A DNA stretch of 64,000 nucleotides, from the NCBI RefSeq assembly GCF_003918875.1, contig NW_025765492.1:744001-808000 (forward strand), read 5' to 3'. The DNA comes from Haliotis rubra. Taxonomy: Eukaryota. The notes under the pieces are model-generated. The model saw only the letters and a list, made by a program, of their open reading frames with translations, did no database searches and was not told where the DNA came from. Positions 136-46,100 of this stretch are shown in pieces (the first letter of the stretch is position 1; the number at the start of each line of letters is the position of its first letter). A program made the translations under genes and the position numbers.

Positions 136-671
136 AGAGGTGCCCCGCTGGTGACGATCCCACCGTAACGTGTGATCCCGCTCTGTGTTCAGTGGCTCCA
201 GCCGCATTCAGAGATCAACTCTGCTGCTCCACTTGCAAGCCTGTGATCACAGCGTTCACGTTACCTCCAACAAACCCTGCCAGAACCACGGCCTCCATGA
301 TGGCGGGACCTACGGGAGGGCCACCTAGAGGAGGAACCACGGCCTCCATGATGGCGGGACCAACAGGGGGTGCACCTAGAGGAGGAACCACGGCCTCCAT
401 GATGGCGGGACCAACCGGAGGTGCACCTAGAGGAGGAACAACTGCGTCGATGATGGCGGGACCTACCGGAGGTGCACCTAGAGGAGGAACAACTGCGTCG
501 ATGATGGCGGGACCAACAGGAGGTGCACCTAGAGGAGGAACAACTGCGTCGATGATGGCCGGACCTACAGGACAACCTGCTAGAAGGACGACAGCATCGA
601 TGTTTTCTGCAGTTGGGGGAGGCGGACTTGGTGCCCGTACGACAGCATCCGTGTTTCCTGTTGTAGCTTGA
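136..671 (+). CDS. Terminal exon A: 6-Cys domain plus Met/Gly/Thr-rich 17-aa repeat (GGTTASMMAGPTGGAPR, about 6 copies); 5' exons lie outside the window
   Basis: Acceptor tttcag|AG (phase 1), then RCPAGDDPTVTCDPALCSVAPAAFRDQLCCSTCK, 51-bp repeats, stop TGA at 671, AATAAA at 832-837. Confidence 0.8.
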
Positions 672-1065
672 ACGTCATCAAAATAGCGCTGGTTGTTTGA
701 AATACAACATATTGTGCTCCATTTTATACATTTGTTTCAGTGAGCGATTCACAGCTGTCATATTCCAATAGATATACAAACTGAAAGATACACAGTAACC
801 ATTAGGGACATGTAAAAACCGTAACCTCAAGAATAAAACGTACCAACTCAGGCATCTGGTTTATATTTTATGGGGAATAGTGTCAAAGGAGAAACCTAGA
901 TATATAGGCAAGATTACTCCCTTTGTCTTTACCTAACTATACGTTTGGATTAGTTGCGATTGCCGGACCGCCATTGTGGTCGAGTGATCTGATGTATACG
1001 TATAGGCGTACAAAGTCATGGTTCTTTGACCAGCACAGACGTTATTGGAGTTCCATCAGTGCATA

Positions 1066-1492
1066 TGTAGCGGCCATAAACTTTCCGAGTCCCGTGCTGG
1101 GACTCGAACCACGGACCTTCTGATCCGAAGTCGGACGCCTTGTCCACATGACCAAAGAGGTTATCCCCGTCAGCAAGCTGACAAGGTAAGGATGTCATCT
1201 GTGGGATGACTCCACGTCCTGCTACATACTCCCCCGTCAACAGAAGGCACGTCCCGAGCCGCATAGTTGGGTACTGAGACTTATTTTGCTCAAATTTCAT
1301 ATGAACGTGCTCAGCCCCACGTTAGGCGCCAATGTAGCGGTCATAAAATGTCGAGTCCCGTGCTGGGATTCGAACCACGAACCTTCTATTCCCAAGTCGG
1401 ACGCCTTGTCCACATGACCAAAGAGGTTAACCCCGTCAGCAAGCTGACAAGGTAAGGATGTCATCTGTGGGATGACTCCACGCCCTGCTACT
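1066..1492 (-). mobile_element. TRIM (miniature non-autonomous LTR retrotransposon) with tRNA-Arg-like sequence in its LTRs
   Basis: Two ~160-bp direct repeats (1066-1226, 1333-1492) bounded by TGTAGC...GCTAC(A), with a 106-bp interior. Minus-strand PBS TGGCGCCTAACGTGGGGC (1314-1331) is one mismatch from the tRNA-Lys primer site. Purine tract GGGGGAGTA precedes the other LTR. No TSD seen. Confidence 0.85.
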
Positions 1493-1918
1493 GTTATCTG
1501 TGAATACAGCTAAGCTTGTATATCGTATGTGCATCAATCGAACCATTCACTTTACGAAGGTACGTGTGGAACTGCACGATGGCGTATGTTATCAATGATG
1601 TCTGAACAGCTTATTTTTGTTGCGTGTCTTACAAGGCAAATTATGTAAACGACTGAGATAATTTTACTGGCAATTCAATGTTTCAAATAAGTTTAATGTT
1701 CTATTATTTCGTGACATATTTCAAAAGCTAATCGCATTGTTTTCATGGATGCTTTAAGTTTGACATCAACTTTTTTTAATTATTCGCTACCTGGTTGCAA
1801 TTTGTCAGCCATAATGTACAGAGTGGGTATCAGTAGTTGCACTGATCCAATTAAGATCAACAATGCAGGGAACCCGTCATCAATAATGTTAACTGTTTTT
1901 TAATCTCCTCTACTGCAG

Positions 1919-4900
1919 CCAACTGCCCCGCTGGGGATGATCCTGACACCGGCTGCCAAGCATCATCTTGCACGAACCAAACCCTGGCTGATATATCATG
2001 TTGTGCCACCTGCAAAGATGATGTGTCCACACCAGGTACCAGCTCTACATTCACAGCTACGACTGCTTCTGTTGTCAATCCGTCTCTTGGAACAAGATCG
2101 AACACTCCTCTATCCAGTATCGGAGGAACGTCAGGTTCACAACCTATTGGTACTGGAGGAACATCAGGTAGCCTTCCAACGTTTACAGAAATACCGTCAG
2201 ATACATCACCATCCACAACGGCACCAGCAAGTACGCCAGCGTCCACAAGTATCGAAGGAACGTCAGGTTCACAACCTATTGGTACTGGAGGAACATCTGG
2301 TAGCCTACCAACTTTTACAGAAATAACGTCAGATACATCACCATCCACAAGGGGACCAGCAAGTACGCCAGCGTCCACAAGTATCGAAGGAACGTCAGGT
2401 TCACAACCATTGGTACTGGAGGAACATCTGGTAGCCTACCAACGTTAACAGAAACAACGTCAACATCACCACACAAGGGTACGCCAACGTCCACAAGTAT
2501 CGTCAGGTTCACAACCATTTCGTCAGGATTAACAGGAACACCAACGACATCAGTCAGTAACGTCAGCTATCACATCGGATACATCACCGCCCACGGTAAC
2601 CACAACTTCAGGTTCCAACACACCACCTACAGCCACAGAAGGGGCATCAGGTACACAAACTGCAATAAGTACACCAGTTACAACAGCAACATCAGGTACA
2701 TCACGGGCCACAGTTAGTGGAGGTACATCGGGTACACCACCCACAGTTAGTGGACAGACATCGAATACACCACCACGAACAGTTAGTGTAGGTACATCGG
2801 GTACACTGCCCACAGTTAGTGGAGGGACATCAGGTACATCACCACCAACAGTTAGTGGACAGACATCGGATACAACACCACCAACAGTTAGTGTAGGTAC
2901 ATCGGGTACACCACCACTCACAGTTAGTGAAGGTACATCGGGTACACCACCACCAACGGTTAGTGGACAGACATCAGGGACACCACCACCAACGGTTAGT
3001 GGACAGACATCAGGTACACCACCAACAACGGTTAGTGGACAGACATCGGGTACACCACCAACAACGGTTAGTGGACAGACATCAGGTACACCACCACCAA
3101 CGGTTAGTGGACAGACATCAGGTACACCACCACCAACGGTTAGTGGACAGACATCAGGTACACCAACCACAACACAACGTTAGTGGACAGACATCGGGTA
3201 CACCACCAACAACGGTTAGTGGACAGACATCGGGTACACACCAACAACGGTTAGTGGACAGACATCACCAACGGTTGGGACAGACATCAGGTACACCACC
3301 CACAGTTACTGGAGAGACATCGGGTACACCACCACCAACGGTTAGTGGACAGACATCAGGTACACCACCACCAACGGTTAGTGGACAGACATCAGGTACA
3401 CCACCACCAACGGTTAGTGGACAGACATCAGGTACACCACCACCAACGGTTAGTGGACAGACATCGGGTACACCACCAACAACGGTTAGTGGACAGACAT
3501 CGGGTACACCACCAACAACGGTTAGTGGACAGACATCAGGTACACCACCACCAACGGTTAGTGGACAGACATCAGGGTACACCACCACCAACGGTTAGTG
3601 GACAGACATCAGGTACACCACCACCAACGGTTAGTGGACAGACATCAGGTACACCACCACCGGTTAGTGGACAGACATCAGGTACACCACCACCAACGGT
3701 TAGTGGACAGACATCAGGTACACCACCACCAACGGTTAGTGGACAGACATCAGGTACACCACCACCAACGGTTAGTGGACAGACATCAGGTACACCACCA
3801 CCAACGGTTAGTGGACAGACATCGGGTACACCACCACCAACGGTTAGTGGACAGACATCAGGTACACCACCACCAACGGTTAGTGGACAGACATCAGGTA
3901 CACCACCACCAACGGTTAGTGGACAGACATCAGGTACACCACCACCAACGGTTAGTGGACAGACATCAGGTACACCACCACCAACGGTTACTGGACAGAC
4001 ATCACGGTACACCACCAACAACGGTTAGTGGACAGACATCAGGTACACCACCACCAACAGTTAGTGGAGAGACATCGGGTACACCACCACCAACGGTTAG
4101 TGGACAGACATCAGGTACACCACCACCAACGGTTAGTGGAGAGACATCAGGTACACCACCACCAACGGTTAGTGGAGGTACATCAGGTACACCACCACCC
4201 ACAGTTAGTGGACAGACATCGGGTACACCACCACCCACAGTTAGTGGAGAGACATCAGGTACACCACCACCCACAGTTAGTGGAGAGACATCAGGTACAC
4301 CACCACCCACAGTTAGTGGACAGACATCAGGTACACCACCACCCACAGTTAGTGGACAGACATCAGGTACACCACCACCCACAGTTAGTGGAGAGACATC
4401 AGGTACACCACCACCCACGGTTAGTGGACAGTTAGTGGAGACATCACGGTTAGTGGACGAGACATCACCCACCACACAGTTAGTGGAGAGACATCAGGTA
4501 CACCACCACCCACAGTTAGTGGACAGACATCAGGTACACCACCACCCACAGTTAGTGGACAGACATCGGGTACACCACCACCCACAGTTAGTGGAGAGAC
4601 ATCGGGTACACCACCACCCACAGTTAGTGGAGGTACATCAGGGTACACCACCACCCACAGTTAGTGGAGAGTACATCGGGTACACCACCACCCACAGTTA
4701 GTGGAGGTACATCGGGTACACCACCACCCACAGTTAGTGGAGTGACATCGGGTACACCACCACCCACAGTTAGTGGAGAGACATCAGGTACACCACCACC
4801 CACAGTTAGTGGACAGACATCAGGTACACCACCAGCCACAGTTAGTGAAGGTACATCGGGTACACCACCACCCACAGTTAGTGGACAGACATCAGGTACA

Positions 4901-7900
4901 CCACCACCCACAGTTAGTGGACAGACATCAGGTACACCACCACCCACAGTTAGTGGAGAGACATCGGGTACACCACCAGCCACAGTTAGTGGACAGACAT
5001 CAGGTACACCACCACCCACAGTTAGTGGAGAGACATCGGGTACACCACCACCCACAGTTAGTGGAGGTACATCAGGTACACCACCACCCACAGTTAGTGG
5101 AGAGACATCAGGTACACCACCACCCACAGTTAGTGGACAGACATCAGGTACACCACCACCCACAGTTAGTGGACAGACATCAGGTACACCACCACCCACA
5201 GTTAGTGGAGGGTACATCACCACCCACAGGTACACCACCACCACCCACAGTTAGTGGAGAGACATCAGGTACACCACCACCCACAGTTAGTGGAGAGACA
5301 TCAGGTACACCACCACCCACAGTTAGTGGAGAGACATCGGGTACACCACCACCCACAGTTAGTGGAGGTACATCGGGTACACCACCACCCACAGTTAGTG
5401 GAGGTACATCAGGTGGAGAGACACCACCACCCACAGTTAGTGGAGAGACATCTGGTACACCACCACCCACAGTTAGTGGAGAGACATCAGGTACACCACC
5501 ACCCACAGTTAGTGGAGAGACATCGGGTACACCACCACCCACAGTTAGTGGAGGTACATCAGGTACACCACCACCCACAGTTAGTGGAGGTACATCAGGT
5601 ACACCACCACCCACAGTTAGTGGAGAGACATCGGGTACACCACCACCCACAGTTAGTGGAGAGACATCGGGTACACCACCACCCACAGTTAGTGGAGAGA
5701 CATCAGTTAGTTAGTGGACAGACATCAGGTACACCACCACCCACAGTTAGTGGACAGACATCAGGTACACCACCACCCACAGTTAGTGGACATCAGGTAC
5801 ATCGGGTACACACCACCACCCACAGTTAGTGGAGGGACATCAGGTACACCACCACCCACAGTTAGTGGACAGACATCGGGTACACCACCACCCACAGTTA
5901 GTGGAGGGACATCAGGTACACCACCACCCACAGTTAGTGGACAGACATCAGGTACACCACCACCCACAGTTAGTGGAGGGACATCAGGTACACCACCACC
6001 CACAGTTAGTGGAGAGACATCAGGTACACCACCACCCACAGTTAGTGGAGGTACATCGGGTACACCACCACCCACAGTTAGTGGAGAGACATCGGGTACA
6101 CCACCACCCACAGTTAGTGGAGGTACATCGGGTACACCACCACCCACAGTTAGTGAAGGTACATCAGGTACACCACCCACAGTTAGTGGACACCACCCAC
6201 AGTTAGTGGAGGTACATCAGGTACACCACCACCCACAGTTAGTGGACAGACATCAGGTACACCACCACCCACAGTTAGTGAAGGTACATCAGGTACACCA
6301 CCACCACCCACAGTTAGTGGACAGACATCAGGTACACCACCACCCACAGTTAGTGGAGACATCAGGTACATCACCACCACACAGTTAGTTAGTGAAGGTA
6401 CATCGGGTACACCACCACCCACAGTTAGTGGAAGGGTACATCGGGTGGACATCCACCACCCACAGTTAGTGGAGAGACATCACCACCCACAGGTACACCA
6501 CCACCCACAGTTAGTGGAGAGACATCAGGTACACCACCACCCACAGTTAGTGGAGAGACATCAGGTACACCACCACCCACAGTTAGTGGAGAGACATCAG
6601 GTACACCACCACCCACAGTTAGTGGACAGACATCAGGTACACCACCACCCACAGTTAGTGGAGACATCAGGTACACCACCACCCACAGTTAGTGGAGACA
6701 TCAGGTACACCACCACCCACAGTTAGTGGAGGTACATCGGGTACACCACCACCCACAGTTAGTGGAGGTACATCAGGTACACCACCACCCACAGTTAGTG
6801 GAGAGACATCGGGTACACCACCACCCACAGTTAGTGGAGAGACATCAGGTACACCACCACCCACAGTTAGTGGACAGACATCAGGTACACCACCACCCAC
6901 AGTTAGTGGAGAGACATCAGGTACACCACCACCCACAGTTAGTGGACAGACATCAGGTACACCACCCACAGTTAGTGGACAGACATCGGTACACCACCAC
7001 CCACAGTTAGTGGAGAGGGTACATCGGGTACACCACCACCCACAGTTAGTGGACAGACATCAGGGTACACCACCACCCACAGTACATCGGGTACACCACC
7101 ACCCACAGTTAGTGGACAGACATCAGGTACACCACCACCCACAGTTAGTGGAGAGACATCAGGTACACCACCACCCACAGTTAGTGGACAGACATCGGGT
7201 ACACCACCACCCACAGTTAGTGGAGAGACATCAGGTACACCACCACCCACAGTTAGTGGAGAGACATCAGGTACATCAGTAGTGGAGTTAGTGACATCGG
7301 GTACACCACCACCCACAGTTAGTGGACAGACATCAGGTACACCACCACCCAGTTAGTGGACAGACATCAGGTACACCACCACCCACAGTTAGTGGAGAGA
7401 CATCGGGTACACCACCACCCACAGTTAGTGGACAGACATCAGGTACACCACCACCCACAGTTAGTGGAGACACATCGGGTACACCACCACCCACAGTTAG
7501 TGGAGACACATCAGGTACACCACCACCCACAGTTAGTGGACACATCAGGTACATCGGGTACACCACCACATCCACACCACCATCCACAGTTAGTGGAGAG
7601 ACATCAGGTACACACACCACCCACCACCCACAGTTAGTGAAGGTACATCGGGTACACCACCACCCACAGTTACTGAAGGTACATCGGGTACATCCCCATC
7701 CACAGTTACTGGAGGTACATCGGGTACACCACCACCCACAGTTAGTGGAGGTACATCAGGTACACCACCACCCACAGTTAGTGGAGGGACATCGGGTACA
7801 CCACCGCCTACAGTTAGTGGAGAGACATCGGGTACACCATCACCCACAGTCACTGGAGGTACATCGGGTACACCACCACCCACAGTTAGTGGAGAGACAT

Positions 7901-8379
7901 CGGGTACACCACCATCCACAGTTACTGGAGGTACATCGGGTACACCACCACCCACAGTTAGTGGAGGGACATCGGGTACACCACCGCCTACAGTTAGTGC
8001 AGAGACATCGGGTACACCATCACCCACAGTTAGTTATGGTACATCGGGTACATCACAATCCACAGTTACTAGAGGTACATCGGGTACATCACCACCCACA
8101 GTTAGTGAAGGTACATCGGGTACACCACCACCCACAGTTAGTGGAGGTACATCGGGTACACCACCACCCACAGTTAGTGGAGGGACATCGGGTACATCAC
8201 CATCCACAGTTAGTGGAGGTACATCGGGTACACCACCACCCACAGTTAGTGAAGGTACATCGGGTACATCACCACCCACAGTTAGTGAAGGTACATCGGG
8301 TACACCACCACCCACAGTTAGTGGAGGTACACCGGGTACATCACCATCCACAGTTACTGGAGGTACATCGACTACATGA
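1919..8379 (+). CDS. Terminal exon B: 6-Cys domain plus giant Pro/Thr/Ser/Gly mucin repeat (TPPPTVSG[Q/E/G]TSG)n; frame broken many times in this assembly
   Basis: Acceptor ctgcag|CC (phase 1), NCPAGDDPDTGCQASSCTNQTLADISCCATCK, 36-bp tandem array ~2700-8370, stop TGA 8377-8379, AATAAA 8788-8793. The small indels in the array are probably consensus errors. Confidence 0.7.
2700..8370 (+). repeat. 36-bp coding minisatellite (acaccaccacccacagttagtggagagacatcaggt), roughly 150 copies
   Basis: Directly visible; variant subtypes are regionally clustered. Confidence 0.97.
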
Positions 8380-9016
8380 CAATCTACAGAGGTAGATCAG
8401 GTACACCACCACCTACAGCTACAGGAGGGACACCACCACCTCCAGCTGCAGGAGGAACCTCAGGTAGAATATCTTCATCAACTGTTTTTCCAAAGACAAC
8501 ATTGGTTTTTGCAACAACGGGATCGATTTTCTTTAAGAACCTGTAACAACACCGTAGTAAGGCTGAACTCAAATGTTTTATATATCAGTTAATCATATAA
8601 CAATATTACATGTCACTGTAATGAACTGATGTTGTAAGTGGAACCATGCCATGCCTTCCACTACGTTTGTGTCATAGGAAATCTGCGATAATACTGCAAG
8701 TCTCTGTTTCGGTATTCTGGTTATTCATTCATTCAACCTATTTTGTCAGATAACAGTCATTTCAACTTGTAAAGACATATCAAACATAATAAAATTTATT
8801 TTCTGACGTTCATGTTGTTGCTTTGTCTCATATGCATATAACACCTTTAGACATCTCACTGACAGCACATCAGAACTAGGTTTGGTGGAGAACTGTTTAC
8901 TCTGCTGTTTACTGTGCTTCTTTGCAACATCCCACCAAATCTAAGTATACGAACGTTTGGATGAATATGCCAGCTAATGGCAGTGGTGGACCATGTTCTT
9001 TACCAGTATTCATGAC

Positions 9017-10460
9017 TTAGTGGAGAGACATCTGGTACACCACCACCCACAGTTACTGGAGGTACATCGGGTACACCACCACCCACAGTTAGTGGAGGTA
9101 CATCAGGTACACCACCGCCTACAGTTAGTGGAGGGACATCGGGTACACCACCATCCACAGTTACTGGAGGTACATCGGGTACACCACCACCCACAGTTAG
9201 TGGAGGTATATCAGGTACACCACCACCCACAGTTAGTGGAGAGACATCGGGTACACCATCACCCACAGTTAGTGAAGGTACATCGGGTACATCACCGCCT
9301 ACAGTTAGTGGAGAGACATCGGGTACACCATCAGCCACAGTTAGTGAAGGTACATCGGGTAGATCACCACCCACAGTTAGTGAAGGTACATCAGGTACAT
9401 CACAACCCACGGTTAGTGAAGGTACATCGGGTACATCACCATCCACAGTTACTGGAGGGACATCAGGTACATCACCGCCTACAGTTAGTGGAGGTACATC
9501 GGGTACATCACCACCTACGGTTAGTGGAGGTACATCGGGTACATCACCACCCACAGTTAGTGAAGGGACCTCGGGTACATCACCACCCACAATTAGTGGA
9601 GGTACATCGGGTACATCACCACCCACAGTTAGTGAAGGTACATCGGGTACATCACCATCCACAGTTAGTGGAGGTACATCGGCTACATGACAATCTACAG
9701 AGGTAGATCAGGTACACCACCACCTCCAGCTGCAGGAGGAAGCTCAGGTACAATATCTTCAACAACTGTATTTCCAAAGACAACATTGTTTTTTGCAACA
9801 ACGGGATCGATTTTCGTTAAGAACCTGTAACAACACCGTAGTTAGGCTGAACTCAAATGTAGAATAGGGAACTGAATATAATGTAAAATGTCTTTGTCAT
9901 TTGTGGAGGTGGCTCTGCATGATTTCACATTGGTATTGTTTTTCTTTACTAAATAGTGTGAAGGAATTAGACACTCAAATTGACATCAATATTTTATCAT
10001 TATTCGAGGCGTTTATTCTGTTTATATATCAGTTGATCATATAAAAATATTACGTGTCACTGTGCTCATATGAACTCATGTTGTAAGTGGAACCATGTCA
10101 TGCCTTCCACTACGTTTATGTCATAGGAAATCTGCGATAATACTGCAATTCTCTGTTTCGGTATTCTGGTTATTAATTCATTCAACCTATTTTGTCAGAT
10201 GACAGTCATTTCAATTTGTAAAGACATCAAATATAATAAAATTTATTTTCTGACGTTCATGTTGTTGTTTTGTCTCATATGCATATAACACCTTTAGACA
10301 TCTCACTGACAGCACATCAGAACTAGGTTTGGTGGAGAACTGTTTACTCTGCTGTTTACTGTGCTTCTTTGCAATATCACAAATCTAAGTATACGAACGA
10401 TTGGATGAATATGCCAGCTAATGGTAGTGGTGGACCATGCTCTTTGCCAGTATTCATGAC
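9017..10460 (+). pseudogene. Tandem duplicate of the 3' part of exon B and its 3' UTR, without acceptor or Cys domain
   Basis: 36-bp repeats 9017-9690, the same TGA (9688-9690), and a copy of the 8380-9016 sequence with about 160 bp extra near 9860-10020. Confidence 0.75.
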
Positions 10461-11885
10461 TGATTCGGTTATCTAATGCTGGTAGTGGATCATGCTCTTT
10501 GCCAGTATTCATGACTGATTCGATCATCTAATGCTGATGATGGACCATCCTCTAGCCAGTAGTGTTGGATGATTAAGTTATGTAATACTGGTGATGGACC
10601 ATGCTCTTTGCCAGTAGTGCTGGATGATTAAGTCATCTAATGCTGGTGATGGACCATGCTCTTGGCCAGTAGTGTTCGATGATTAGGTCATCTAATACTG
10701 GTGGTGGACCATGCTTTAGACTAGTAGTGTTGGATGATTAGGTCATCTAATACTGGTGGTGGACCATGCTTTAGACTAGTAGTGTTGGATGATTAGGTCA
10801 TCTAATACCGGTGGTTGACCATGCTCTAGACTAGTAGTGTTGGGTGATTAAGTTATGTAATACTGGTGATGGACCATGCTCTTTGCCAGTAGTGCTGGAT
10901 GATTAAGTCATCTAATGCTGGTGATGGACCATGCTCTTGGCCAGTAGTGTTCGATGATTAGGTCATCTAATACTGGTGGTGGACCATGCTTTTGACTAGT
11001 AGTGTTGGATGATTAGGTCATCTAATACTGGTGGTGGACCATGCTTTAGACTAGTAGTGTTGGATGATTAGGTCATCTAATGCTGGTGGTGGGCCATGCT
11101 CTAGACTAGTAGTGTTGGGTGATTAAGTTATGTAATACTGGTGATGGACCATGCTCTTGGCCAGTAGTGTTGGATGATTAGGTCATCTAATGCTGGTGAT
11201 GGACCATGCTCTTGGCCAGTAGTGTTGGATGATTAAGTCATCTAATACTGGTGATGGACCATGCTCTTTGCCAGTAGTGCTGGATGATTAGGTCATCTAA
11301 TGCTGGTGGTGGATCATGCTCTTTGCCAGTAGTGCTGGATGATTAAGTCATCTAATGCTGGTGATGGACCATGCTCTTGGACAGTAGTGTTGGATGATTA
11401 GGTCATCTAATACTGGTGATGGACCATGCTTTAGACTAGTAGTGTTGGATGATTAGGTCATCTAATACTGGTGGTGGACCATGCTTTAGACTAGTAGTGT
11501 TGGATGATTAGGTCATCTAATGCTGGTGGTGGACCATGCTCTAGACTAGTAGTTTTGGATGATTAGGTCATCTAATACCGGTGGTTGACCATGCTCTAGA
11601 CTAGTAGTGTTGGGTGATTAAGTTATGTAATACTGGTGATGGACCATGCTCTTTGCCAGTAGTGCTGGATGATTAAGTCATCTAATGCTGGTGATGGACC
11701 ATGCTCTTGGCCAGTAGTGTTGGATGATTAGGTCATCTAATACTGGTGGTGGACCATGCTTTAGACTAGTAGTGTTGGATGATTAGGTCATCTAATACTG
11801 GTGGTGGACCATGCTTTAGACTAGTAGTGTTGGATGATTAGGTCATCTAATACTGGTGGTGGACCATGCTCTTTACAAGTAGTTT
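10420..11885. repeat. 55-bp minisatellite, about 26 units, with higher-order structure
   Basis: Unit ggatgattaggtcatctaatactggtggtggaccatgctttagactagtagtgtt; a variant unit recurs at 10571, 10846, 11121 and 11616. Confidence 0.95.
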
Positions 11886-12314
11886 TGAACAATGGAGGAA
11901 TGTCAAGAAGTCATCTCAAATGTCGGACTGTAGCAACAGCAAAAACAGAATGGCATTTAAAAAAGCTCGTTTTGTCAGGGGACTAACCTGAGCAGACAAG
12001 AGTTACTGAATAGTGCAGTCAATAGCCTTTAAGCCGAACAGAACGTGGAAAGGGACTTAACACTGCATCCACTGTGCCATATGCCCTTGGGTTATAAAGA
12101 AACCTTACGTCGATGGAATCATGTTCCTTTCACCTAAACGAAAATAATATTAACAAATCGTGTACTTCTGTATATGTCATGCCTAAAGCATCCTCAGTGG
12201 CATCCTCTTGATAATTGGTGGATCCAAATTGCTGATTTTGAACTGATTTAGGGTTGTTTTTTGAGGGTTGGAACTCCTACATATTTAATACATATATTCA
12301 TGTTTACTTCACAG

Positions 12315-14996
12315 AAAACTGTCCGGCGGGTGATGATCCAGATCTAGTCTGCCAAACCTTCTTCTGTGCCAACCAGACCCTGGCCAACGAGTTCTGCTGC
12401 GCCACCTGTAAACCTTTAGTCACTGATACCACGGGTTCAAGCATAACAGCAGCATCCGTCACCGCATCTACAGTCACGTCAGTGGGGACATCTGGGAGCA
12501 GTGCTACCCTGACGACAGGAGGCACATCTGGAAGCAGTGCTACCTTGACAACAGGAGGCACATCTGGAAGCAGTGCTACAATGACGACAGGAGGCACTTC
12601 TGGGAGCAGTGCTACCTTGACAGGAGGAACATCTGGAACTAGTGCTACCATGACGACAGGGGGCACATCTGGAAGCAGTGCTACAATGACGACAGGAGGC
12701 ACATCTGGAAGCAGTGCTACCATGACAACAGGAGGCACATCTGGGAGCAGTGCTACCTTGACAACAGGTGGCACATCTGGAAGCAGTGCTACCATGACAA
12801 CAGGTGGCACATCTGGAAGCAGTGCTACCATGACAACAGGTGGCACATCTGGAAGCAGTGCTACCATGACAACAGGTGGCACATCTGGAAGCAGTGCTAC
12901 CTTGACAACAGGTGGCACATCTGGAAGCAGTGCTACCTTGACAACAGGTGGAACATCTGGGAGCAGTGCTACCTTGACAACAGGAGGCACATCTGGAAGC
13001 AGTGCTACGTTGACAACAGGAGGAACATCTGGGAGCAGTGCTACCTTGACAACAGGAGGCACATCTGGAACTAGCGCTACAATGACAACAGGAGGCACAT
13101 CAGGAACGAGCGCTACCTTGGGAACTAGACATTGACAACAGGAGGCACATCAGGAACGAGCGCTACCTTGACAACAGGAGGCACATCAGGAACGAGCGCT
13201 ACAATGACGACAGGTGGCACATCAGGAACGAGCGCTACCATGACAACAGACAACAGGAGGCACATCTGGAAGCAGTGCTACCATGACAACAGGAGGCACA
13301 TCAGGAACGAGCGCTGACAACAGGAGGCACATCTGGAAGCGCTACCTTGTGTCACCATGACAACAGGAGGCACATCTGGAAGCAGTGCTACCATGACAAC
13401 AGGACATCAGGAAGCAGCACTACCTTGACAACAGGAGGCACATCTGGAAGCAGTGCGACCTTGAGTGCTACCTTGACAACAGGAGGAACATCTGGAAGCA
13501 GTGCTACAATGACGACAGGTGGCACATCGGGAACTAGCGCTACAATGACAACAGGAGGCACATCAGGAACGAGCGCTACCTTGACAACAGGAGGCACATC
13601 AGGAACGAGCGCTACAATGACGACAGGTGGCACATCAGGAACTAGCGCTACCTTGACAACAGGAGGCACATCAGGAACGAGCGCTACCATGACAACAGGA
13701 GGCACATCTGGAACTAGCGCTACAATGACAACAGGAGGCACATCAGGAACGAGCGCTACAATGACAACAGGAGGCACATCTGGAACTGAGCGCTACCATG
13801 ACAACAGGAGGCACATCTGGAAGCAGTGCTACCTTGACAACAGGAGGCACATCTGGAACGAGCGCTACCATGACAACAGGAGGCACATCTGGAAGCAGTG
13901 CTACCATGACAACAGGAGGCACATCTGGAAGGAAATGACGAGGAGGCACATCTGGAACGCGCTACAATGACGACAGGAGGCACATCAGGAACTAGCGCTA
14001 CCTTGACAACAGGAGGCACATCTGGAAGCAGTGCGCAATGACAACAGGACACATCAGGTGCTACCTGACAACAGGCACATCTGGAAGCAGCGCTACAATG
14101 ACGACGGAGGCACTTCTGGAACTAGCGCTACAATGACAACAGGAGGCACATCAGGAACGAGCGCTACAATGACAACAGGAGGCACATCAGGAACTGAGCG
14201 CTACAATGACGACAGGTGGCACATCAGGAACTAGCGCTACCTTGACAACAGGAGGCACATCTGGAAGCAGTGCTACCATGACAACAGGAGGCACATCTGG
14301 AAGCAGTGCTACAATGACAACAGGAGGCACATCAGGAACTAGCGCTACCTTGACAACAGGAGGCACATCTGGAAGCAGTGCTACCATGACAACAGGAGGC
14401 ACATCTGGAAGCAGTGCTACCATGACAACAGGGGGCACATCTGGAAGCAGTGCTACCATGACAACAGGAGGCACATCTGGAAGCAGTGCGACAATGACGA
14501 CAGGTGGCACATCAGGAACTAGCGCTACCTTGACGACAGGAGGCACATCTGGAAGCAGTGCTACCTTGACAACAGGGGCACATCTGGAAGCAGTGCTACC
14601 ATGACAACAGGAGGCACATCTGGAAGCAGTGCGACAATGACGACAGGAGGCACATCAGGAACTAGCGCTACCCTGACAACAGGTGGCACATCTGGAAGCA
14701 GTGCTACCATGACAACAGGAGGCACATCTGGAAGCAGTGCTACCATGACCACAGGAGGCACATCTGGAAGCAGTGCTACCATGACAACAGGAGGCACATC
14801 AGGAACTAGCGCTACCTTGACAACAGGAGGCACATCTGGAAGCAGTGCGACAATGACGACAGGAGGCACATCTGGAAGCAGTGTTACCATGACAACAGCA
14901 TCTCTATTCCCAGCTACCGCAACCCAGGGGATTAGTATATCTTCAACTGCTGCAACCCCACCTACGACAGCCTCTCTGTTTTCAACATCAACATAG
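12315..14996 (+). CDS. Terminal exon C: 6-Cys domain plus Thr/Gly/Ser mucin repeat (TTGGTSG[S/T]SAT[M/L])n; central frameshifts probably assembly noise
   Basis: Acceptor ttcacag|AA (phase 1), NCPAGDDPDLVCQTFFCANQTLANEFCCATCK, 36-bp repeats ~12480-14895, ends TTASLFSTST-TAG at 14996, AATAAA 15572-15577. Confidence 0.75.
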
Positions 14997-16189
14997 ATTA
15001 ATGTAGCAGTACTGATTTTTTGTATAAACGATCACATGTACACATCAATTGGTCAAACATCTAACGAATTACATAAGAGAAATGTTTGTATCATAAACGA
15101 TGTAGCGGGGTATTGCCATTACTGAGGGACAACGTTCACATGCATATTCATCATGTTTATAATTTTCTTTTGTTGATGGTCATGCTTAATTATCCACAAT
15201 ATAAATGTTTCATGTTTAGTGATGCAGTGTTTTCATTTTTCTTTCCTTGCTGCTATTTTGTTTGATTTTGGTTTTTGAATGTGTTGAGGTTGAGTATTAA
15301 TGTTACGTAGTTTTCATATTATTGATGATATATTTAAATTCATTTTTCATCTTACAGCTGCTGTATGTTATGATATGGATTGTTGTCGAGGGTCGGTTAG
15401 GTTCCTGAGTACTGAAACAGTCACGACCAGGTTCGATTCCCCATATCGGTGCAATGTGAGAAGTCCATTTCTGGTGTCCCCCGCCGTAATGTCTGATGGA
15501 ATATCACTCACTTTGAAATGATTAAGATGTTGTTAATTTCATTTATGCTTTTGTTTTGCAAATCGAATGATAATAAAAGTAGTCCTTCAAAGTCTTCTCT
15601 TGAGATTTATATCATTACTATACCCACAAAGAAATACATCGCGGTGGTTCCCGGAGAAAGCATTTGTCTTATGCCTTTGCTGTGATTTACCTTTGTAGTG
15701 GTGTAATTCTTAAATGATCGAATCTTGGCATCGAATCTAGTGATTGATAGCATGAGCAAAGAATCAATATGTGGGTCACTCAGAGTATACCCTGTAACAA
15801 CCCGATCATCATACAGTTGCCAATATGTAGCCCAGTGGTACAAGTGTTCGCAAGCCACGACGATTCCACGGGTTCGATTCCCTTCATGGGGTGTATTACA
15901 ATGGGTAATACAATATGTGTTTGAAACATTGTGCTGGGTTGCGTGAAACATTTGGTAAATTGACATTGTCAAATGGCTGAAATGTGTACAAATGCTCAGA
16001 AGTACATCCCGCCTCATGAATATATACGCAAACAGGTGTTATTCCGTGTCTGAGGCATCTGTCACTCATGGATGCCTGGGAATGGAATGTTGTTCTTAGT
16101 CTTATACGACAGTAGACCAGCCGGCCAGTAAACAACACACTGAACTGACAGCGTCAAACAAATTATGGTTGTGTGTATTGTGTTACTGT

Positions 16190-22657: not shown

Positions 22658-25600
22658 ATGATGTCAGCTCCAACGTACGTCGCTACCACGATACTAGTAA
22701 GTTAGTCAACTGCATTGTACTGTAATGTAAACTCTACTGACCAGGGAAAACCAAGTTCTATGGAGAGTCATCTTCTTTATTGCAATTAGTTTCGGTGTAG
22801 GTACTAACGCTATCAAGCAAGTGATGATAACGGTGATGATATCATATGCTTGATAACCGTGTTAGGACCTACACCGAAACGTCGCACTCATTGCGACAAA
22901 GAAGTTGACTATCCATAGAACTTTGTTTTCCTTCATCTTTACAACTTCTAAAATGCCTCTCATAGAAACTACTGACCAGGTTTAGACCACAATACCACAA
23001 GTATATTAACAAGCATAAGTGTCACATGTTTAACATCGCCTCCCCATATCAGTGGGTTGTGTCCACCTATTATCTCGTTTCTCTCACCCTCAAGGTTACT
23101 GACAAAAGGGAGGGACCAATCAATTAGATTTGCGTTATGTGTTTTCTGACTGACTGAGTGACTGAGTTTGGTTTTACGCCGCTTTTAGCAATATTCCAGC
23201 AACATCGCGGCGGGGGACACCAGAAATGGGCTTCACACATTGTGCCCATGTGGGGATTCGAACCCGGGTCTTCGGCGTGAGAAGCCAACGCTTTAACCAT
23301 TAGGCTACCCCACCGCCCCTGTTTTCTGAACATCGACAGTAGACTGTTATTTAGTTTTCAAAAACCTTCAGGTTACTGGATGTTTTTGTTGAAAGCTCAC
23401 TTTATCGTTATTACTGCAATATGAAAAGTTAGTCAAACACAGTTTGATGGTGTTTAAATGGATGCAAACAAGCAGCGATTACTCGATAGCGATGTACTTG
23501 ACACGAGTGTCGGAGTGCGTTCTCCACGTTGCGACTTGTAGCAACAACTTGTAGCATGCAACACAGTTGCAACGTGAGAACACCCTACTAGTAACGATTT
23601 GAAATCGCATACAACTAGTGGCAGCCGAGTTGTAAGACATCAGATTTGTCCTTATTCCTACTACAAATCGCAAGCTCTCAACCAAATACACTTCGCTCTA
23701 CCACCATGTATACTGTAATAAAACACACTTTTGCCCTGAACTATTATAGTTAAAGCACGAGGACGCTTGCGTCCGAGTGTTTTAACGTTATAATAGTTCA
23801 GGGCGAAAGTGTGTTTTATTACACTATACATGGTGGTAGGGCGAAGTGTATTTCTTTTCTAAGATACCAAATTTAATACTTTCTAAATATAATTACGATT
23901 AATTTAAGGCAGAAAACAAACGACGGTGTCGGTGACCTAAATTAAGAATCCTCGCACAGGGCTAACTGGCGCGCTGTTCTATTGATGTGTCTGCCCCCTA
24001 CGTTAAGACGAACGTTACCAGAAAAAGACAAATGATAACAGTTTGATGACGGTTTACGTTCGGATTAAATATCTTCTGAATTATTTTAATTACATCTGTC
24101 ATTAACGTAAACCATATGGGGCAATATGAACGTTGCATTTCTACTACCAGCGTAAGTTTAGATCAGTACATCCAGAGAAGTTGAGTAGTCAAGCGACATT
24201 CCACAATTGCATTGTGGAATGTAAACATTACGAACGTTACCGTGTCGCTGAAAACTTGTGAGTCGAAATGACACATTTTAACCGTCGTAAAACATAAACG
24301 TAATGTTTCCACCAGTGATGTTAGCTGCGTGAAGCAACAGCAAACCAAGAAACTGGATGCAACGGTGTAGTTTACTGTAGGAGGCCGTACGAGGCGATGA
24401 CAACTGACATGCATCGTGACGTCGCTTACATTGTGACGTAATGTAAAATGGTTCGATTACGAGGGGGCACACTAGAATGGCACAGTGACGGGATAACGTC
24501 ATTCAATTGTTACGTCATCAAAAAACTATACCTTTATTGTCTGATAATGTATTTTTTTTTCGATTGTTCTAACCGCTAGGCATCTTAGAAATTAATTCAT
24601 CATGATTTGGGGTATAGTTTGGTGATGAATGTGGACTGAGATGCTGTTTTGAAGTTTTTGTGACAGTTTTCACCGGTGGGACAGGATAGTCTAATGATCA
24701 ACGCGTTCGCTCGTCACACCCGGATTGAGTCCTCACATAAGTAAAACGTGTGAAGCCCCCAGCCGTGATATGGCTAGAGTATTGCACAAAGCGGCGTAAA
24801 ACCATACTTACTTCCCGGTGATGATCATTCTGTGTTTTATCACCACGTTCGGTCCATGGGATTGGTTATTACGTAAACTGCTGCGTTGGCACGCTGTATG
24901 GATTGAAACCACGAGGCTACCCCTAGCCGTAATAAGGGGCGGTGGGGTAGCTTAGTGGTTAAAGCGTTCGCTCGTCACTCTGAAAACTCGGGTTCTATTC
25001 CCCAAATGGATACAACGTGTGAAGCCGATTTCTGGTGTCAACCGCCGTGATATTGCTGGAATATTGCTAAAAGAGGAGTAAAAAAACTAAACACACTCAC
25101 TAACCGTGATAAAAGTGAACTCATTCACTTACGAAGTTTCACTTTTTCGAAACCTACGTTCACGATGATGATGATGCTTTGCTATATAACAAATGAACGA
25201 AACCCATTATCCCTCACACGTCACAGGAACAGTCGGAATAAAACACCTATTCAGTTACCCATGAGCGTACTGGCCTTCGTATGATAACAACACGATACTG
25301 TCAGTCTGTATATTCCAGTCCGATCCCTACGTCATGAAGGGAGATGGCGAGGCCTATGAAGGGTTCCTCGTTGACATACTCGACAAAGTTGCTGAGAAGG
25401 TTGGTTTCTACTACCTCATTCAGCCCTCAAAAGGCGGACAATACGGTTCTTACAGCAATGGACAATGGAGCGGCATGATTGGAGAGGTGGTACGAAGGGT
25501 ATGTATACACAGTAATAAACTGTGTAGTTCCTGCGATTTGTCAGTTTTGTCTGCAAAAGACCCTGCTTTTACCAAAAATGTTAATGACTATGGAAAGTGT

Positions 25601-43100: not shown

Positions 43101-43660
43101 TTGAGGACATAGTTGATGATGGAAGAATCAGTATTGGAATGGTGCGTCATGGAAGTGCATTTCAATCATTCAAGACGAGCAAAGAAGACATCTACCAGCG
43201 TGTGGCTAACTACGTTGAGATGCGAAACTCGTTTGTCAACAACACTGCAGAAGGAATTGAAAGAGTTAGACGTAGTCATGGAAACTTTGTAATGATTATG
43301 GAGTCGTTGACAGCTGAATACCATGCCGAGCAACTACCATGTAATGTTATGGTGTATGGCAAAAGTCATTTCAGTAAGGCATTGGCTCTTTTCACAATTC
43401 AAGGGTCCGGTCTCAAGCTGAAAATCGATGATGCATTGCGCAAATTGAGAGAAGACGGCACACTATACAAGCTGCAGGTACTATGGTGGGGAAAGTGGTT
43501 CTGCTTTCCTGGAGTTGCGAAACGACAGCAACCAACCATCAGGGCTGTACAAGTTTCCTTTCGGAGACTTGCAGCACCGTTCCTGCTCCTCATGGTGGGT
43601 GCCATTCTGGCTGTTGTAGTCTTGTTGGGCGAGATCGTCTTCAAGAAACTCAGGCAGTAG
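40170..43660 (+). CDS. Minimal iGluR/IR-like receptor copy 3, ~421 aa; exons 40170-40205, 41859-42038, 42357-42696, 42951-43660
   Basis: Intact frame and the same splice structure as copy 1. Confidence 0.92.
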
Positions 43661-45424
43661 AGTTTCGGGTTTTTTACAAAGCGATCTGCATTCATGCATT
43701 GGATGCCCTTCCAAAAGTCACGTGACCTCCTTTACATTTCCCTTCACTTTGTGTAGCCATTGTAACTACATAAGTAGTTGTGTTGACAGCTGACACTGTC
43801 AGAATTTTATCGTAGACTTATTCATATTTAGATACCTGTACACCCCATATAAACGTTTACTTTGACTAAAGTGTGCTTCACGATTCCAGCCTGGAATCTT
43901 CCATCTTATCGGGCTGTACTCCCTGAAGACTGACTGACTGAGTTTAGTTTTACGCCGCTTTTAGCAATATTCCAGCAATATCACGGCGGGGGACACCAGA
44001 AATGAGCTTAACACATTGTGCCCATGTGGGGAATCGAACCCGGGTCTTCGGCGTGACGAGCCAACGCTTTAACCATTAGGCTACCCCACCGCCCCTACTC
44101 CCTGAAGATACTGATATAGATCCTACGACTGTGTTGTCTCTTCATGTAGGTTTCCTATATATCACTGATGAACATTTTCGGTATATAGATTTATGTGTAA
44201 CCTAAATCAACTTTGTTGTATTGGTGTTTTATTATATGTTATATTGTATCTGTTATATATGGAGCAAAATATATGATGACAATAATCAGTCCTGGTTGTC
44301 ATTTAAACAAACACGGGCACCAACAATGGTAAGTTCTTACTCTCCTCAACGAAGGACTGTTATACGCGTGGTGGTTGAACACGTGAATTAAATAGACCAC
44401 ACTCATAATGTGGACACAAACTATGCATTTTACGATTGACACATGTATGTTTCAGATACTGCTTTTCCAGTAACTGTGTTCAATTACAGCAGTACAAAAG
44501 TAACTTTAACTGCAACCACTGACTGACTGACTGAGTTTAGTTTTACGCCGCTTTTAGCAATATTCCAGCAATATCACGGCGGGGGACACCAGAAATGGGC
44601 TTCACACATTGTGCCCATGTGGGGAATCGAACCCGGGCCTTCAGCGTGACGAGCCAACGCTTTAACCACTAGGCTACCTCACCGCCTCCTTAACTGCAAC
44701 CAGCCAGTTGCAGATGAAATCACGACAGACCCAGTACTTAACTGCCAACGGACTATCTAAACACAGGCCACACATAAAAGTTCCACAACGAGACCTCAGT
44801 TGGAAGTCGTGATTATTACTGTATTATAATGGTAGTGATAGTTTAGCAACGTTCTGGGTATCCTATCTAATGATTGCGTCTGTGTATATCAGCTACAGCG
44901 ACAAAGGGAGGGTGTGTGTGTACGGGAGTGGGTAACAAAACAAATTGTCAAACTAAAAACATATGTTGTCCATTTGGATATTCTGAACAAATGCATCCGA
45001 GAACAATTAGATAACCAGTCCCACAAAACCTAATATGTTATGATAGAAATGGATTTCAGAAAATAACAGTTTGAATGTGTAAAAGATACATTTCTGCTAG
45101 ATCTTCCCCTGGTTATGGACTAAAATGGGGATCAGGTGCCCAGGCTTGACGGCTGTTGCTCATCTTTAAAGTCACAGTTTAGCCTGGTCACAACTGGAAT
45201 ATAGAGGTTAGAGAGAATTATTCTGCTGTGTCACTGGCAAACCCTTATTCACAGAGGGGCGGTGGGGGTAACCTCGTTGGCTCGTCACGCCGAAGTTCGA
45301 TTCCCACATGGGCATGTGTTAAGCCCATTTCTGGTGTCCACCGCCGTGACATTGCTGGAATATTATTGCCGGCGTAAAACTGTCATCTTATTCACAGATA
45401 TTTCGGGTTCACGTCATTCACGTC

Positions 45425-46100
45425 ATGGCATTCACATCAGAAAGCAGTGTTACCATGACAACAGGAGGCACATCTTGAACGGTGATCACTTGGAGCACAT
45501 CAGAAACCAGGGCTACCTTGACCACTTGGGGCACATCTGGAAGCAGGGCTAAAATAACAACAGGCAGCACATCTGGAAGCAGTGATATCATGACGTCAGG
45601 AGGCAAACCAGGAAGCAGTGCTACCATGACAATAGGTAGCACATCTGGAGGCAGTGCTGCCATGACAACAGGAGGCAAACCTGGAAGCAGTGCTACCATG
45701 ACAACAGGATGCACATCTGGAAGCAGTGCTGCCATGGCGTCAGAAGGCAAACCAGAAGCAGTGCTACCATGACAACAGCAGGCTGTGTTCCCAGTGATCC
45801 CAACGTCAGAAGGCAAACCAGGAAGCAGTGCTACCAACAACAGCATCTGTTTTGCCAGCTGTCCCAACGTAGAGGATTAGTATACAACAGCATCTGTGTT
45901 CCCAGCTGTCCCAACGTAGAGGATTAGTATACCAGCAGCATCTGTGTTCCCAGCTGTCCCAACGTAGAGGATTAGTATACCAGCAGCATCTGTGTTCCTG
46001 CAGACGGGGTCGTCAGAACGATCTTCCACAGCTGCGACCCATCATTACGAAGGACAACGTTCACCTTGATGTCTCATGTTTTTGGTTAATGTTTTTGTTT
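45425..46100 (+). pseudogene. Degenerate remnant of mucin exon C repeats and 3' UTR
   Basis: Decayed TTG.TSGSSATM units with indels; ggacaacgttcac (46052) matches the exon C UTR (15127); no Cys domain. Confidence 0.8.

What the first reader, a model, noticed from the sequence alone, without database searches (positions are those of the whole stretch)
136..14996. Three interchangeable-looking Cys-domain plus mucin terminal exons
Seen: exons at 136, 1919 and 12315 each begin with a phase-1 acceptor just before a homologous C-x9-C-x4-C-x9/11-CC-x2-C domain. Each continues into a different repeat: Met/Arg-containing 17-mer, Pro-rich 12-mer, or Pro-free Gly/Ser/Thr 12-mer. Exon lengths are about 180, 2100 and 890 aa, each with its own stop and AATAAA. 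I found no ATG/signal-peptide exon between them; the A-B gap is only 1.2 kb and one third of it is a TRIM. Inference: one upstream gene picks one of at least three O-glycosylated tails by alternative last-exon usage, tuning mucus, adhesive or matrix properties.
Basis: partly seen in the sequence, partly recalled or inferred. Interest (0 to 1): 0.8.

Follow-up and report, generated by a model that had tools for sequence, protein, structure and literature searches.

The report
Spare tail exons of abalone protease-like gene
Three related end-pieces of an abalone gene for a secreted, protease-like protein lie in a row, each coding a small six-cysteine knot plus a different sugar-coatable repeat tail; the gene probably swaps between them, but no RNA data could be reached to prove it.

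Summary
Three paralogous six-Cys modules (141-236, 1924-2013, 12320-12409) each sit right behind a phase-1 AG acceptor. Each runs into a different Ser/Thr-rich tandem array with its own stop and AATAAA. Only A is an unbroken ORF here; B and C carry about 16 and 9 frame-breaking indel lesions.

The module is the C-terminal, PLAC-like domain of gastropod MIG-17-like (thrombospondin-repeat-less ADAMTS-type) proteins, where module plus tail always form the last exon. Exon A is the last exon of an annotated Haliotis asinina gene (P0015). Its previous exon ends in a phase-1 donor 3.4 kb upstream, so the gene body lies left of the window.

Exon B is conserved at the same place in H. asinina. Its acceptor and module are about 95% identical, against 74-77% for the flanks. 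It has an uninterrupted 2,676-aa Pro/Thr/Ser ORF and a conserved stop and poly(A) signal, yet it is in no gene model. No start exon was found in the gaps. C shows long-term purifying selection.

Alternative last-exon use is the best reading (about 0.5) but is untested: only DNA runs were reachable. The breaks in B and C look more like assembly errors than decay. The same scan noted frame-broken mucin genes elsewhere in this genome.

The parts
136..671 (+). Cassette A, a terminal exon. Acceptor AG at 134-135; six-Cys module 141-236; 17-aa repeat array 283-572; C-terminal TTASMF/TTASVFP motifs; stop 669-671.
   Evidence: Intact ORF. It is 75% identical over 178 aa to the last exon of H. asinina P0015. 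Between the two species the module has dN 0.027 and dS 0.345.
832..837 (+). Poly(A) signal AATAAA of cassette A.
   Evidence: Present in the same sequence context in H. asinina at L002 28598.
1066..1492 (.). High-copy tRNA-related repeat element (TRIM or SINE pair) inserted in the A-B gap.
   Evidence: Absent at the orthologous site of H. asinina, where L002 28829-28865 faces window 1065-1527. Depth in whole-genome contigs is 10^4-10^5.
1919..8379 (+). Cassette B. Acceptor AG at 1917-1918; six-Cys module 1924-2013; 132-nt repeats 2116-2462; 36-nt Pro/Thr/Ser array 2689-8370; stop 8377-8379. Frame-broken in this assembly.
   Evidence: The H. asinina ortholog is an unbroken 2,676-aa ORF. Its acceptor is 95.5% and its module 93.9% identical, against 74-77% in the flanks.
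8788..8793 (+). Poly(A) signal AATAAA of cassette B.
   Evidence: Conserved in H. asinina at L002 37792, inside the aligned 3' UTR block.
8993..10340 (+). B': partial duplicate of the end of B. It holds an 18.7-unit array at 9017-9688, the same stop, a 3' UTR copy and AATAAA at 10235. It has no six-Cys module and no matching acceptor.
10401..11887 (.). 55-nt satellite, 27 copies. One seed unit also lies at 8960-9016, which marks the boundary of the B' duplication.
12315..14996 (+). Cassette C. Acceptor AG at 12313-12314; six-Cys module 12320-12409; 36-nt Pro-free Gly/Ser/Thr array 12488-14898; tail with TTASLFP and TTASLFS motifs; stop 14994-14996. Frame-broken in this assembly.
   Evidence: Against B the module has pS 0.89 and pN 0.16. 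Repeat codons differing from the consensus are 106 synonymous against 47 non-synonymous, with no nonsense codon among 760.
15572..15577 (+). Poly(A) signal AATAAA behind cassette C.
45218..46000 (+). Decayed fourth cassette (D). It has a relic of the module end (FCCVTGKPLFTE), a SINE insertion, a degenerate C-type array with real stop codons, and a triplicated ASVFPAVPT* tail.

Best explanation
A, B and C are paralogous terminal-exon cassettes of one gene whose body lies to the left of the window. The gene codes a secreted MIG-17-like protein: ADAMTS family, M12B protease fold plus ADAMTS cysteine-rich domain 2, no thrombospondin repeats.

Shown:
- Each cassette codes the family's C-terminal six-cysteine (PLAC-like) module plus a Ser/Thr-rich tail, with its own stop and poly(A) signal.
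- In relatives, module plus tail are always the last exon, entered through a phase-1 intron.
- Cassette A is the last exon of the orthologous annotated gene in H. asinina.
- Cassette B is conserved there with acceptor, reading frame, stop and poly(A) signal intact.

Inferred:
- The phase-1 donor of the penultimate exon is spliced to the first acceptor, A, which has the weakest pyrimidine tract. Transcription then ends at A's poly(A) site.
- Alternatively A is skipped and the donor is joined to B or C.
- The result is one protease-like body carrying a 178-aa, a roughly 2,150-aa proline-rich (mucin-type) or a roughly 890-aa proline-free tail.
- The frame breaks of B and C in this window are most likely consensus errors of the assembly inside long tandem arrays.
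For: 1. A profile of the three modules finds gastropod proteins in which a Reprolysin domain and ADAMTS_CR_2 are followed by the same module and a repeat tail at the C-terminus. NCBI names them 'mig-17-like' or 'ADAMTS-like'.
2. H. asinina P0015 ends in a near-identical copy of exon A. Its last intron is phase 1, reading ...CCA G|gtgagc. That fits G|AG (A), G|CC (B) and G|AA (C).
3. The H. asinina locus is collinear, with A at L002 27615 and B at 29236.
4. B there is a 2,676-aa ORF without a stop, with Thr 24%, Ser 20% and Pro 19% throughout.
5. The conservation profile of B mirrors that of the annotated exon A. For B: intron 74%, last 22 intron bases 95.5%, module 93.9%, then 77%. For A: 66%, 88.6%, 91.3%, then 78.7%.
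6. The poly(A) signals of A and B are conserved.
7. The B and C modules are saturated at synonymous sites (pS 0.89) but keep all six Cys and the motifs (pN 0.16). Both were therefore under purifying selection long after the duplication.
8. C ends, in the repeat register, with the family's TTAS-x-F C-terminal motif.
9. No ATG ORF with a hydrophobic start and a phase-1 donor lies in the A-B gap of either species. Only one poor candidate lies in the B-C gap.
10. All defects in B and C are indels. There is no nonsense substitution in 1,830 plus 760 in-register codons. The lesions are scrambled, unique and avoid the array edges. By contrast, the truly decayed cassette D has nonsense codons, a lost Cys and a SINE insertion.
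Against: - There is no RNA evidence. The only runs holding the stretch are DNA contigs that run straight across introns.
- No protein in 5.8 billion clusters carries a B- or C-type module joined to anything.
- The H. asinina annotation uses only A and calls nothing on B.
- As assembled, B and C cannot be translated.
- A long open frame in a young tandem array is partly automatic: a second frame of the H. asinina array is open for 1,858 codons.
- The C ortholog could not be reached, because L002 ends 0.8 kb behind B.
- Paralogous and more distant family genes checked have a single cassette.
Confidence: 0.5

Rival explanations
1. Only cassette A is used. B and C are duplicated terminal exons that are no longer in use, at least in this species, and are decaying. 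The frameshifts in the window are real.
For: - B and C are frame-broken in the window, and C's module and stop are in different frames.
- No gene model or database protein contains them.
- The locus does produce dead copies, namely B' and cassette D.
Against: - In H. asinina, B has an intact 2,676-aa ORF, and its acceptor, module, stop and poly(A) signal are conserved well above the flanks.
- There are about 25 frame-breaking indel lesions but not one nonsense substitution in 2,590 in-register codons. I estimate about 6 would be expected under neutral decay.
- The lesions are scrambled one-off units in the array interiors.
Confidence: 0.2
2. B and C are last exons of separate neighbouring genes. 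Each has its own promoter and a small signal-peptide exon that was not recognised, so these are tandem genes rather than alternative ends of one gene.
For: - Tandem duplication is rife here: four glutamate-receptor-like genes, B' and D.
- My start-exon scan is crude.
- Gene callers on other gastropod contigs predict stand-alone module-plus-tail proteins, though with implausible N-termini read from intron (P0003, P0006).
Against: - The A-B gap is only about 1.2 kb in both species. It is no better conserved than intron (74-79%) and holds no ATG ORF with a hydrophobic stretch and a phase-1 donor.
- The stretch in front of C is the B' copy, a 1.5-kb satellite and 430 nt without a usable ORF.
- In all annotated relatives the module is preceded by the protease-like body.
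Confidence: 0.15
3. The modules are joined in series. Internal donors in A (and B) splice to the next acceptor, so one transcript carries two or three module-plus-repeat units.
For: Each repeat unit of A holds a weak GAG|GTGCAC site in phase 1 that would be frame-compatible with acceptor B. I read this directly from the sequence shown.
Against: - No family member has more than one module.
- The P0015 model ends at A's stop.
- A, B and C each have a conserved stop and poly(A) signal.
- The candidate donors are weak.
Confidence: 0.05

Closest known systems
C. elegans MIG-17 and 'mig-17-like' ADAMTS-family proteins of gastropods (H. asinina P0015 and P0008, H. cracherodii P0001, Lottia P0009, Gigantopelta P0002, Littorina P0010)
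   Same: - M12B protease fold, then ADAMTS cysteine-rich domain 2, then a C-terminal six-Cys module, with no thrombospondin repeats.
[quoted passage not shown]
- Gastropod members carry Ser/Thr-rich tails of 20 to 1,000 aa behind the module.
- 'ADAM family mig-17-like' proteins were detected in snail secretions by proteomics (PMC6744689, PMC5519703).
   Different: - Here at least three module-plus-tail exons lie in a row behind one gene. The relatives that were checked have one.
- The H. asinina ortholog has lost the HExxHxxxxxH zinc site.
- Pfam's PLAC model does not score the module.
Genes with a shared 5' part and a tandem array of homologous alternative 3' terminal exons: Drosophila lola, mod(mdg4) and Broad-Complex (from my own knowledge); C. 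elegans mig-6/papilin long and short isoforms with or without the PLAC domain (PMC12549975)
   Same: - A constant N-terminal body.
- Paralogous 3' cassettes, each coding its own copy of a small Cys-rich domain, with its own stop and poly(A) site.
- All cassettes are entered in the same intron phase.
   Different: - Those are nuclear BTB or zinc-finger regulators with proven isoforms; for papilin there is a single long/short choice.
- Here the product is secreted and the variable part is a giant repeat tail.
- Isoform use is not shown.
Vertebrate ADAMTS7 and ADAMTS12 (mucin-domain ADAMTS that end in a PLAC domain; domain order from PMC4349717, the mucin nature of the spacer from my own knowledge)
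   Same: An ADAMTS-type protein that combines a heavily O-glycosylatable Ser/Thr/Pro stretch with a PLAC-type six-Cys module.
   Different: - In ADAMTS7/12 the spacer lies between thrombospondin repeats and in front of the PLAC domain.
- Here there are no thrombospondin repeats and the repeats follow the module.
ShKT (ShK toxin-like, six-cysteine) domains, as found next to mucin domains in nematode surface mucins (from my own knowledge)
   Same: - The same C1-C2-C3-C4 spacing.
- A weak profile match to ShK peptides, E 0.013.
- A predicted fold of three short helices.
- The only structural match is a hookworm peptide, 6dri, at Z 2.6.
   Different: - The last three cysteines are CC-x2-C, not C-x3-C-x2-C.
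- There is no Pfam ShK match.
- All matches are below significance.

Membership tests
MIG-17-like / ADAMTS-type M12B proteins | A Reprolysin (M12B) catalytic domain upstream in the same protein. | tested here: inconclusive
   The upstream exons lie outside the window. The ortholog P0015 aligns over the whole catalytic region with family members. Its precomputed Pfam list holds only ADAMTS_CR_2.
MIG-17-like / ADAMTS-type M12B proteins | The zinc-binding motif HExxHxxGxxHD. | tested here: not met
   H. asinina P0015 reads ANGIGRALSARTDGE where six relatives read AHE(I/L)(G/A)HxLxxxHD. The state in the window's own species is unknown.
MIG-17-like / ADAMTS-type M12B proteins | ADAMTS cysteine-rich domain 2 directly in front of the C-terminal module. 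| tested here: met
   PF17771 is found in P0001, P0002 and P0005 and in P0015. The module follows within 10 residues.
Canonical ADAMTS | Thrombospondin type-1 repeats. | tested here: not met
   No TSP1 hit in P0001, P0002 or P0005, nor in the precomputed lists of P0008, P0009 and P0015.
PLAC domain (Pfam PF08686) | A match to the family profile. | tested here: not met
   No PLAC hit at E up to 10 for exons A, B and C, nor at E up to 0.1 for full-length relatives. The resemblance rests on six Cys, the CC-x2-C end and the C-terminal position behind the ADAMTS cysteine-rich domain.
ShKT domain | Six Cys in the ShK pattern and a profile or fold match. | tested here: inconclusive
   A profile of 13 modules against PDB sequences gives ShK analogues at E 0.013 to 1.5. 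The AlphaFold model has pLDDT 78. Foldseek finds nothing. VIA-align gives one hit at Z 2.6.
Mucin-type (PTS) tandem-repeat domain | A long tandem array rich in Pro, Thr and Ser. | tested here: met
   B has 36-nt units x about 158. The H. asinina ortholog has Thr 24%, Ser 20% and Pro 19% over 2,676 aa. C is Pro-free and A is Met/Arg-containing, so only B is classical.
Mucin-type (PTS) tandem-repeat domain | Dense O-glycosylation. | not testable with these tools
   This needs glycoproteomics.
Alternative last exons of one gene | One upstream donor compatible in phase with every cassette acceptor. | tested here: met
   The ortholog has a phase-1 donor. The window has phase-1 acceptors at 136, 1919 and 12315.
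Alternative last exons of one gene | Each cassette has its own stop and poly(A) signal. | tested here: met
   The signals of A and B are conserved in H. asinina.
Alternative last exons of one gene | Transcripts that join the shared donor to each acceptor. | not testable with these tools
   No RNA run holds the stretch. The runs that were laid are genomic contigs.
Alternative last exons of one gene | No promoter or first exon between the cassettes. | tested here: inconclusive
   A crude scan for an ATG ORF with a hydrophobic stretch and a phase-1 donor finds nothing in the A-B gap of either species. It finds one poor candidate inside a 3' UTR copy.

The most novel reading that the evidence does not exclude
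A catalytically dead ADAMTS-like protein of abalone is secreted with one of at least three interchangeable C-terminal cassettes. Each cassette has its own six-cysteine module and a very different O-glycosylated repeat tail of 0.2 to 2.7 thousand residues. The cassettes are chosen by alternative last-exon splicing, as in the lola or mod(mdg4) type of 3' cassette array. Here, however, the gene codes an extracellular matrix or mucus protein, and the arrangement has been kept for longer than the Haliotis radiation.
Probability: 0.4. Interest if true: 0.6.

Novelty: new variant of a known kind. Interest (0 to 1): 0.5.

Why it matters
If RNA data confirm it, this would be a clear case of a secreted protein gene that swaps whole glycosylated tails, each with its own disulfide module, through a tandem array of terminal exons. 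That design is known mainly from insect nuclear regulators.

It would show how a mollusc can make matrix or mucus components with different physical properties from one promoter. It would also give a role to a protease-like protein that has lost its zinc site.

There is a practical lesson too. The 8-kb exon B is intact and conserved in H. asinina but missing from its annotation. In this assembly long coding tandem arrays are frame-broken, so mucin-type exons are under-annotated in mollusc genomes.

Tried and rejected
- **RNA evidence.** The look-up of sequencing runs (rna) returned only three runs of one study, with 0.21-0.26 of the words. Laid on 1-2700 they are genomic contigs, about 95% identical, that cross acceptor B and the intergenic DNA without joints. 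This gave no test of splicing.
- **Annotated isoforms.** A profile including the A, B and C N-termini (candidate lengths about 96-987 aa) found no protein with a B- or C-type module. A 2,000-aa B query restricted to the module region (lengths 1,100-3,500 aa) also found none.
- **Multi-cassette layout in relatives.** The H. cracherodii paralog (L001), Gigantopelta (L003) and an ENA contig (L004) each have a single module exon.
- **C ortholog in H. asinina.** The fetched locus ends 0.8 kb behind B, and no called gene lies further down to anchor another fetch.
- **Naming the module.** Pfam gives nothing, Foldseek against PDB gives nothing, and there are only weak ShK-like hints.
- **Upstream window.** The scan's notes on 'reprolysin' point to another piece of the genome.
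- **Rejected: B' as a fourth usable cassette.** It has no module and no matching acceptor.
- **Rejected: a mini-intron at the end of B to rescue the out-of-frame tail.** At 27 nt it is too short, and H. asinina has two stops there.
Full report

A six-frame pattern scan of the whole window finds the C-x9-C-x4-C-x9/11-CC-x2-C module exactly three times. All three are on the + strand, at 141-236 (A), 1924-2013 (B) and 12320-12409 (C). The three align with 14 invariant positions, and B and C are 60% identical to each other.

Each module starts 5 nt behind an AG. That AG follows a pyrimidine-rich stretch and leaves two bases of a split codon, which is phase 1:
- A: tttcag|AG AGG TGC
- B: ctgcag|CC AAC TGC
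- C: tcacag|AA AAC TGT

The arrays are as described:
- A: 51 nt x5.7, unit TTASMMAGPTGGAPRGG.
- B: 36 nt x about 158, unit GTSGTPPPTVSG/E.
- C: 36 nt x68, unit GGTSGSSATMTT.

Stops lie at 669-671, 8377-8379 and 14994-14996. AATAAA lies at 832, 8788 and 15572.

One correction is needed. Only A is an open frame in this assembly. B and C switch frame many times and run into stops.

**2. What the module and the gene are.**

A profile of the three modules, run against 1.84 billion representative proteins, gave seven hits. The informative ones are gastropod proteins in which a Reprolysin (M12B) domain and ADAMTS cysteine-rich domain 2 are followed by this module and a repeat tail at the very C-terminus. 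NCBI calls them 'metalloprotease mig-17-like' or 'ADAMTS-like'. They come from Haliotis, Lottia, Gigantopelta and Littorina. The Littorina protein carries a tail of about 1,000 aa and is named 'mucin-4-like'.

None has thrombospondin repeats. This is the MIG-17 layout, and MIG-17 ends in a PLAC domain (PMC6215420).

Pfam's PLAC and ShK models do not score the module. A 13-sequence profile hits ShK peptides only weakly, at E 0.013. An AlphaFold model (pLDDT 78) shows three short helices. Its only structural match is a hookworm peptide at Z 2.6. I therefore call the module PLAC-like by position and cysteine pattern. Its family is not settled.

**3. Exon A belongs to an annotated gene.**

H. asinina protein P0015 (556 aa, 'ADAMTS 4-like') ends with a near-identical copy of exon A, including the repeat and the final TTASVFPVVA.

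In its locus (L002) the last exon is entered from a 54-nt penultimate exon that ends ...ACC CCA G|gtgagc. This is a phase-1 donor, 3.4 kb upstream. The body of the gene therefore lies left of the window. The donor's G completes GAG with A, GCC with B and GAA with C.

In the H. cracherodii paralog the same intron position and phase are seen.

P0015 has lost all three zinc-binding histidines and the catalytic glutamate, which six relatives keep.

**4. Exon B is a conserved coding exon.**

The H. asinina locus is collinear with the window. A lies at L002 27615 and B at 29236, followed by a 7.4-kb array and an aligned 3' UTR.

There B is open for 2,676 residues from the module to the stop. The composition is Thr 24%, Ser 20%, Pro 19% and Gly 14%, and the same repeat register holds from beginning to end.

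The conservation profile of B copies that of the annotated exon A:

| Segment | B | A |
|---|---|---|
| Intron | 74% | 66% |
| Last intron bases | 95.5% (last 22) | 88.6% (last 35) |
| Module | 93.9% | 91.3% |
| Behind the module | 77% | 78.7% |

Between the species the modules have dN/dS of 0.027/0.345 (A) and 0.035/0.177 (B). These rest on small counts.

The stop directly behind the array and the AATAAA are conserved for B, and the AATAAA for A.

Nevertheless nothing is annotated on B in H. asinina. No database protein carries a B- or C-type module.

**5. Exon C.**

Its ortholog could not be fetched, so the evidence is internal.
- B and C are saturated at synonymous sites (pS 0.89) but differ at only 16% of non-synonymous sites. 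They keep all six Cys, PAGDDPD, NQTLA and CCATCK. The duplication is therefore far older than the split from H. asinina (dS 0.2-0.35), and C stayed under purifying selection.
- Within the array, codons that differ from the consensus are 106 synonymous against 47 non-synonymous.
- None of the 760 in-register codons is a stop.
- In the repeat register the exon ends with TTASLFP...TTASLFSTST*, the C-terminal motif of the family.

**6. Are the frame breaks real?**

A wrap-around alignment to the unit consensus gives 14 net-frameshifting indel clusters in B and 9 in C. B also has a compensated pair at about 2418 and 2560.

Several observations favour assembly error:
- No in-register codon is a nonsense codon (0 of 1,830 and 0 of 760).
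- With that many neutral indels I would expect about six nonsense substitutions. This is my estimate from the share of one-step-to-stop changes in the unit.
- The odd units are unique and scrambled.
- They avoid the first 480-620 nt and the last 320-750 nt of the arrays (P about 0.03-0.05 each).
- Short arrays are free of indels: A, B' and the 55-nt satellite.
- Cassette D at 45218-46000 shows what real decay looks like. It has nonsense codons, a lost cysteine and a SINE insertion.
- A note of this scan reports frame-broken repeat genes elsewhere in this assembly.

I rate consensus error at roughly two in three. It cannot be settled here, because the short-read contigs stop at about 2430.

**7. 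Nothing between the cassettes looks like a gene start.**

The A-B gap is 1,247 nt. Of this, 427 nt is a high-copy element that is absent from H. asinina. The rest is conserved only at intron level.

A crude scan looked for an ATG ORF with a hydrophobic stretch and a phase-1 donor. It finds nothing in the A-B gap in either species. The B-C gap yields one poor candidate inside a 3' UTR copy.

The B-C gap itself consists of a module-less duplicate of B's end (B'), a 1.5-kb satellite and 430 nt without a usable ORF.

**8. Verdict.**

The best reading is one MIG-17-like gene, possibly a dead protease, followed by a row of paralogous terminal-exon cassettes. A is proven as a terminal exon by orthology. 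B is proven as a conserved coding exon. C is very probably one as well.

The three being alternative ends of the same transcript is the most economical way to give B and C a start codon and a signal peptide. It fits the common phase and the weak proximal acceptor (pyrimidine share 0.59 for A, 0.77 for B, 0.64 for C). This step is inferred, not shown.

Rivals are unused or decaying duplicates, separate genes with unseen first exons, and serial joining.

The design resembles the 3' cassette arrays of lola, mod(mdg4) and Broad-Complex (from my own knowledge) and the long and short papilin isoforms (PMC12549975). It would be new for a secreted protein with giant repeat tails. I score it a new variant of a known kind, with interest 0.5.

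Noticed in passing
L002 (H. asinina), protein P0015 residues about 262-276: The ortholog of the gene that owns exon A has lost the whole zinc site. It reads ANGIGRALSARTDGE where relatives read AHEIGHALSALHDGD, so it is probably a pseudoprotease.
   Followed up: partly
window 8380-8540 and 9690-9830; L002 37260-37420: Behind the stop of B (and of B') lies a relic of the family's C-terminal tail (STVFP..TTLVFATTGSIFF). It is out of frame in the window and behind two stops in H. asinina. An old premature stop seems to have cut off B's original end.
   Followed up: partly
window 8960-11887: A 55-nt satellite of 27 copies starts with a unit that also stands once at 8960-9016. The duplication that made B' is bounded by this unit.
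   Followed up: partly
window 45218-46000: A decayed fourth module-plus-array cassette lies between the third and fourth glutamate-receptor-like genes. It contains a SINE insertion and a triplicated 48-nt end, ASVFPAVPT*.
   Followed up: partly
window 46417-49081: A 2.7-kb array of a 15-nt unit (CACACACACAACAGT, 182 copies) with strong strand skew. It is open in two frames as His/Thr-rich ORFs and is probably a plain satellite.
   Followed up: no
window 25334-27199, 32044-34079, 41874-43660, 53062-54424: Four tandem copies of an ionotropic glutamate-receptor-like gene on the + strand. The last exon of the second copy is split into two ORFs (33404-33736 and 33765-34079).
   Followed up: no
window 1066-1492: The repeat element in the A-B gap is missing at the orthologous site of H. 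asinina. It reaches depths of 10^4-10^5 in whole-genome contigs of a related sample, so it is a young, very high-copy insertion.
   Followed up: partly
L002 29167-37260: An 8-kb, 2,676-codon open exon of H. asinina carries no annotation at all. Long tandem-repeat coding exons appear to be skipped by the annotation pipeline.
   Followed up: partly
L002 527-676 and 1791-1907 (minus strand): Weak protein matches to P0015 (38-40% identity) upstream on the opposite strand suggest a paralogous protease-like gene lying head to head.
   Followed up: no
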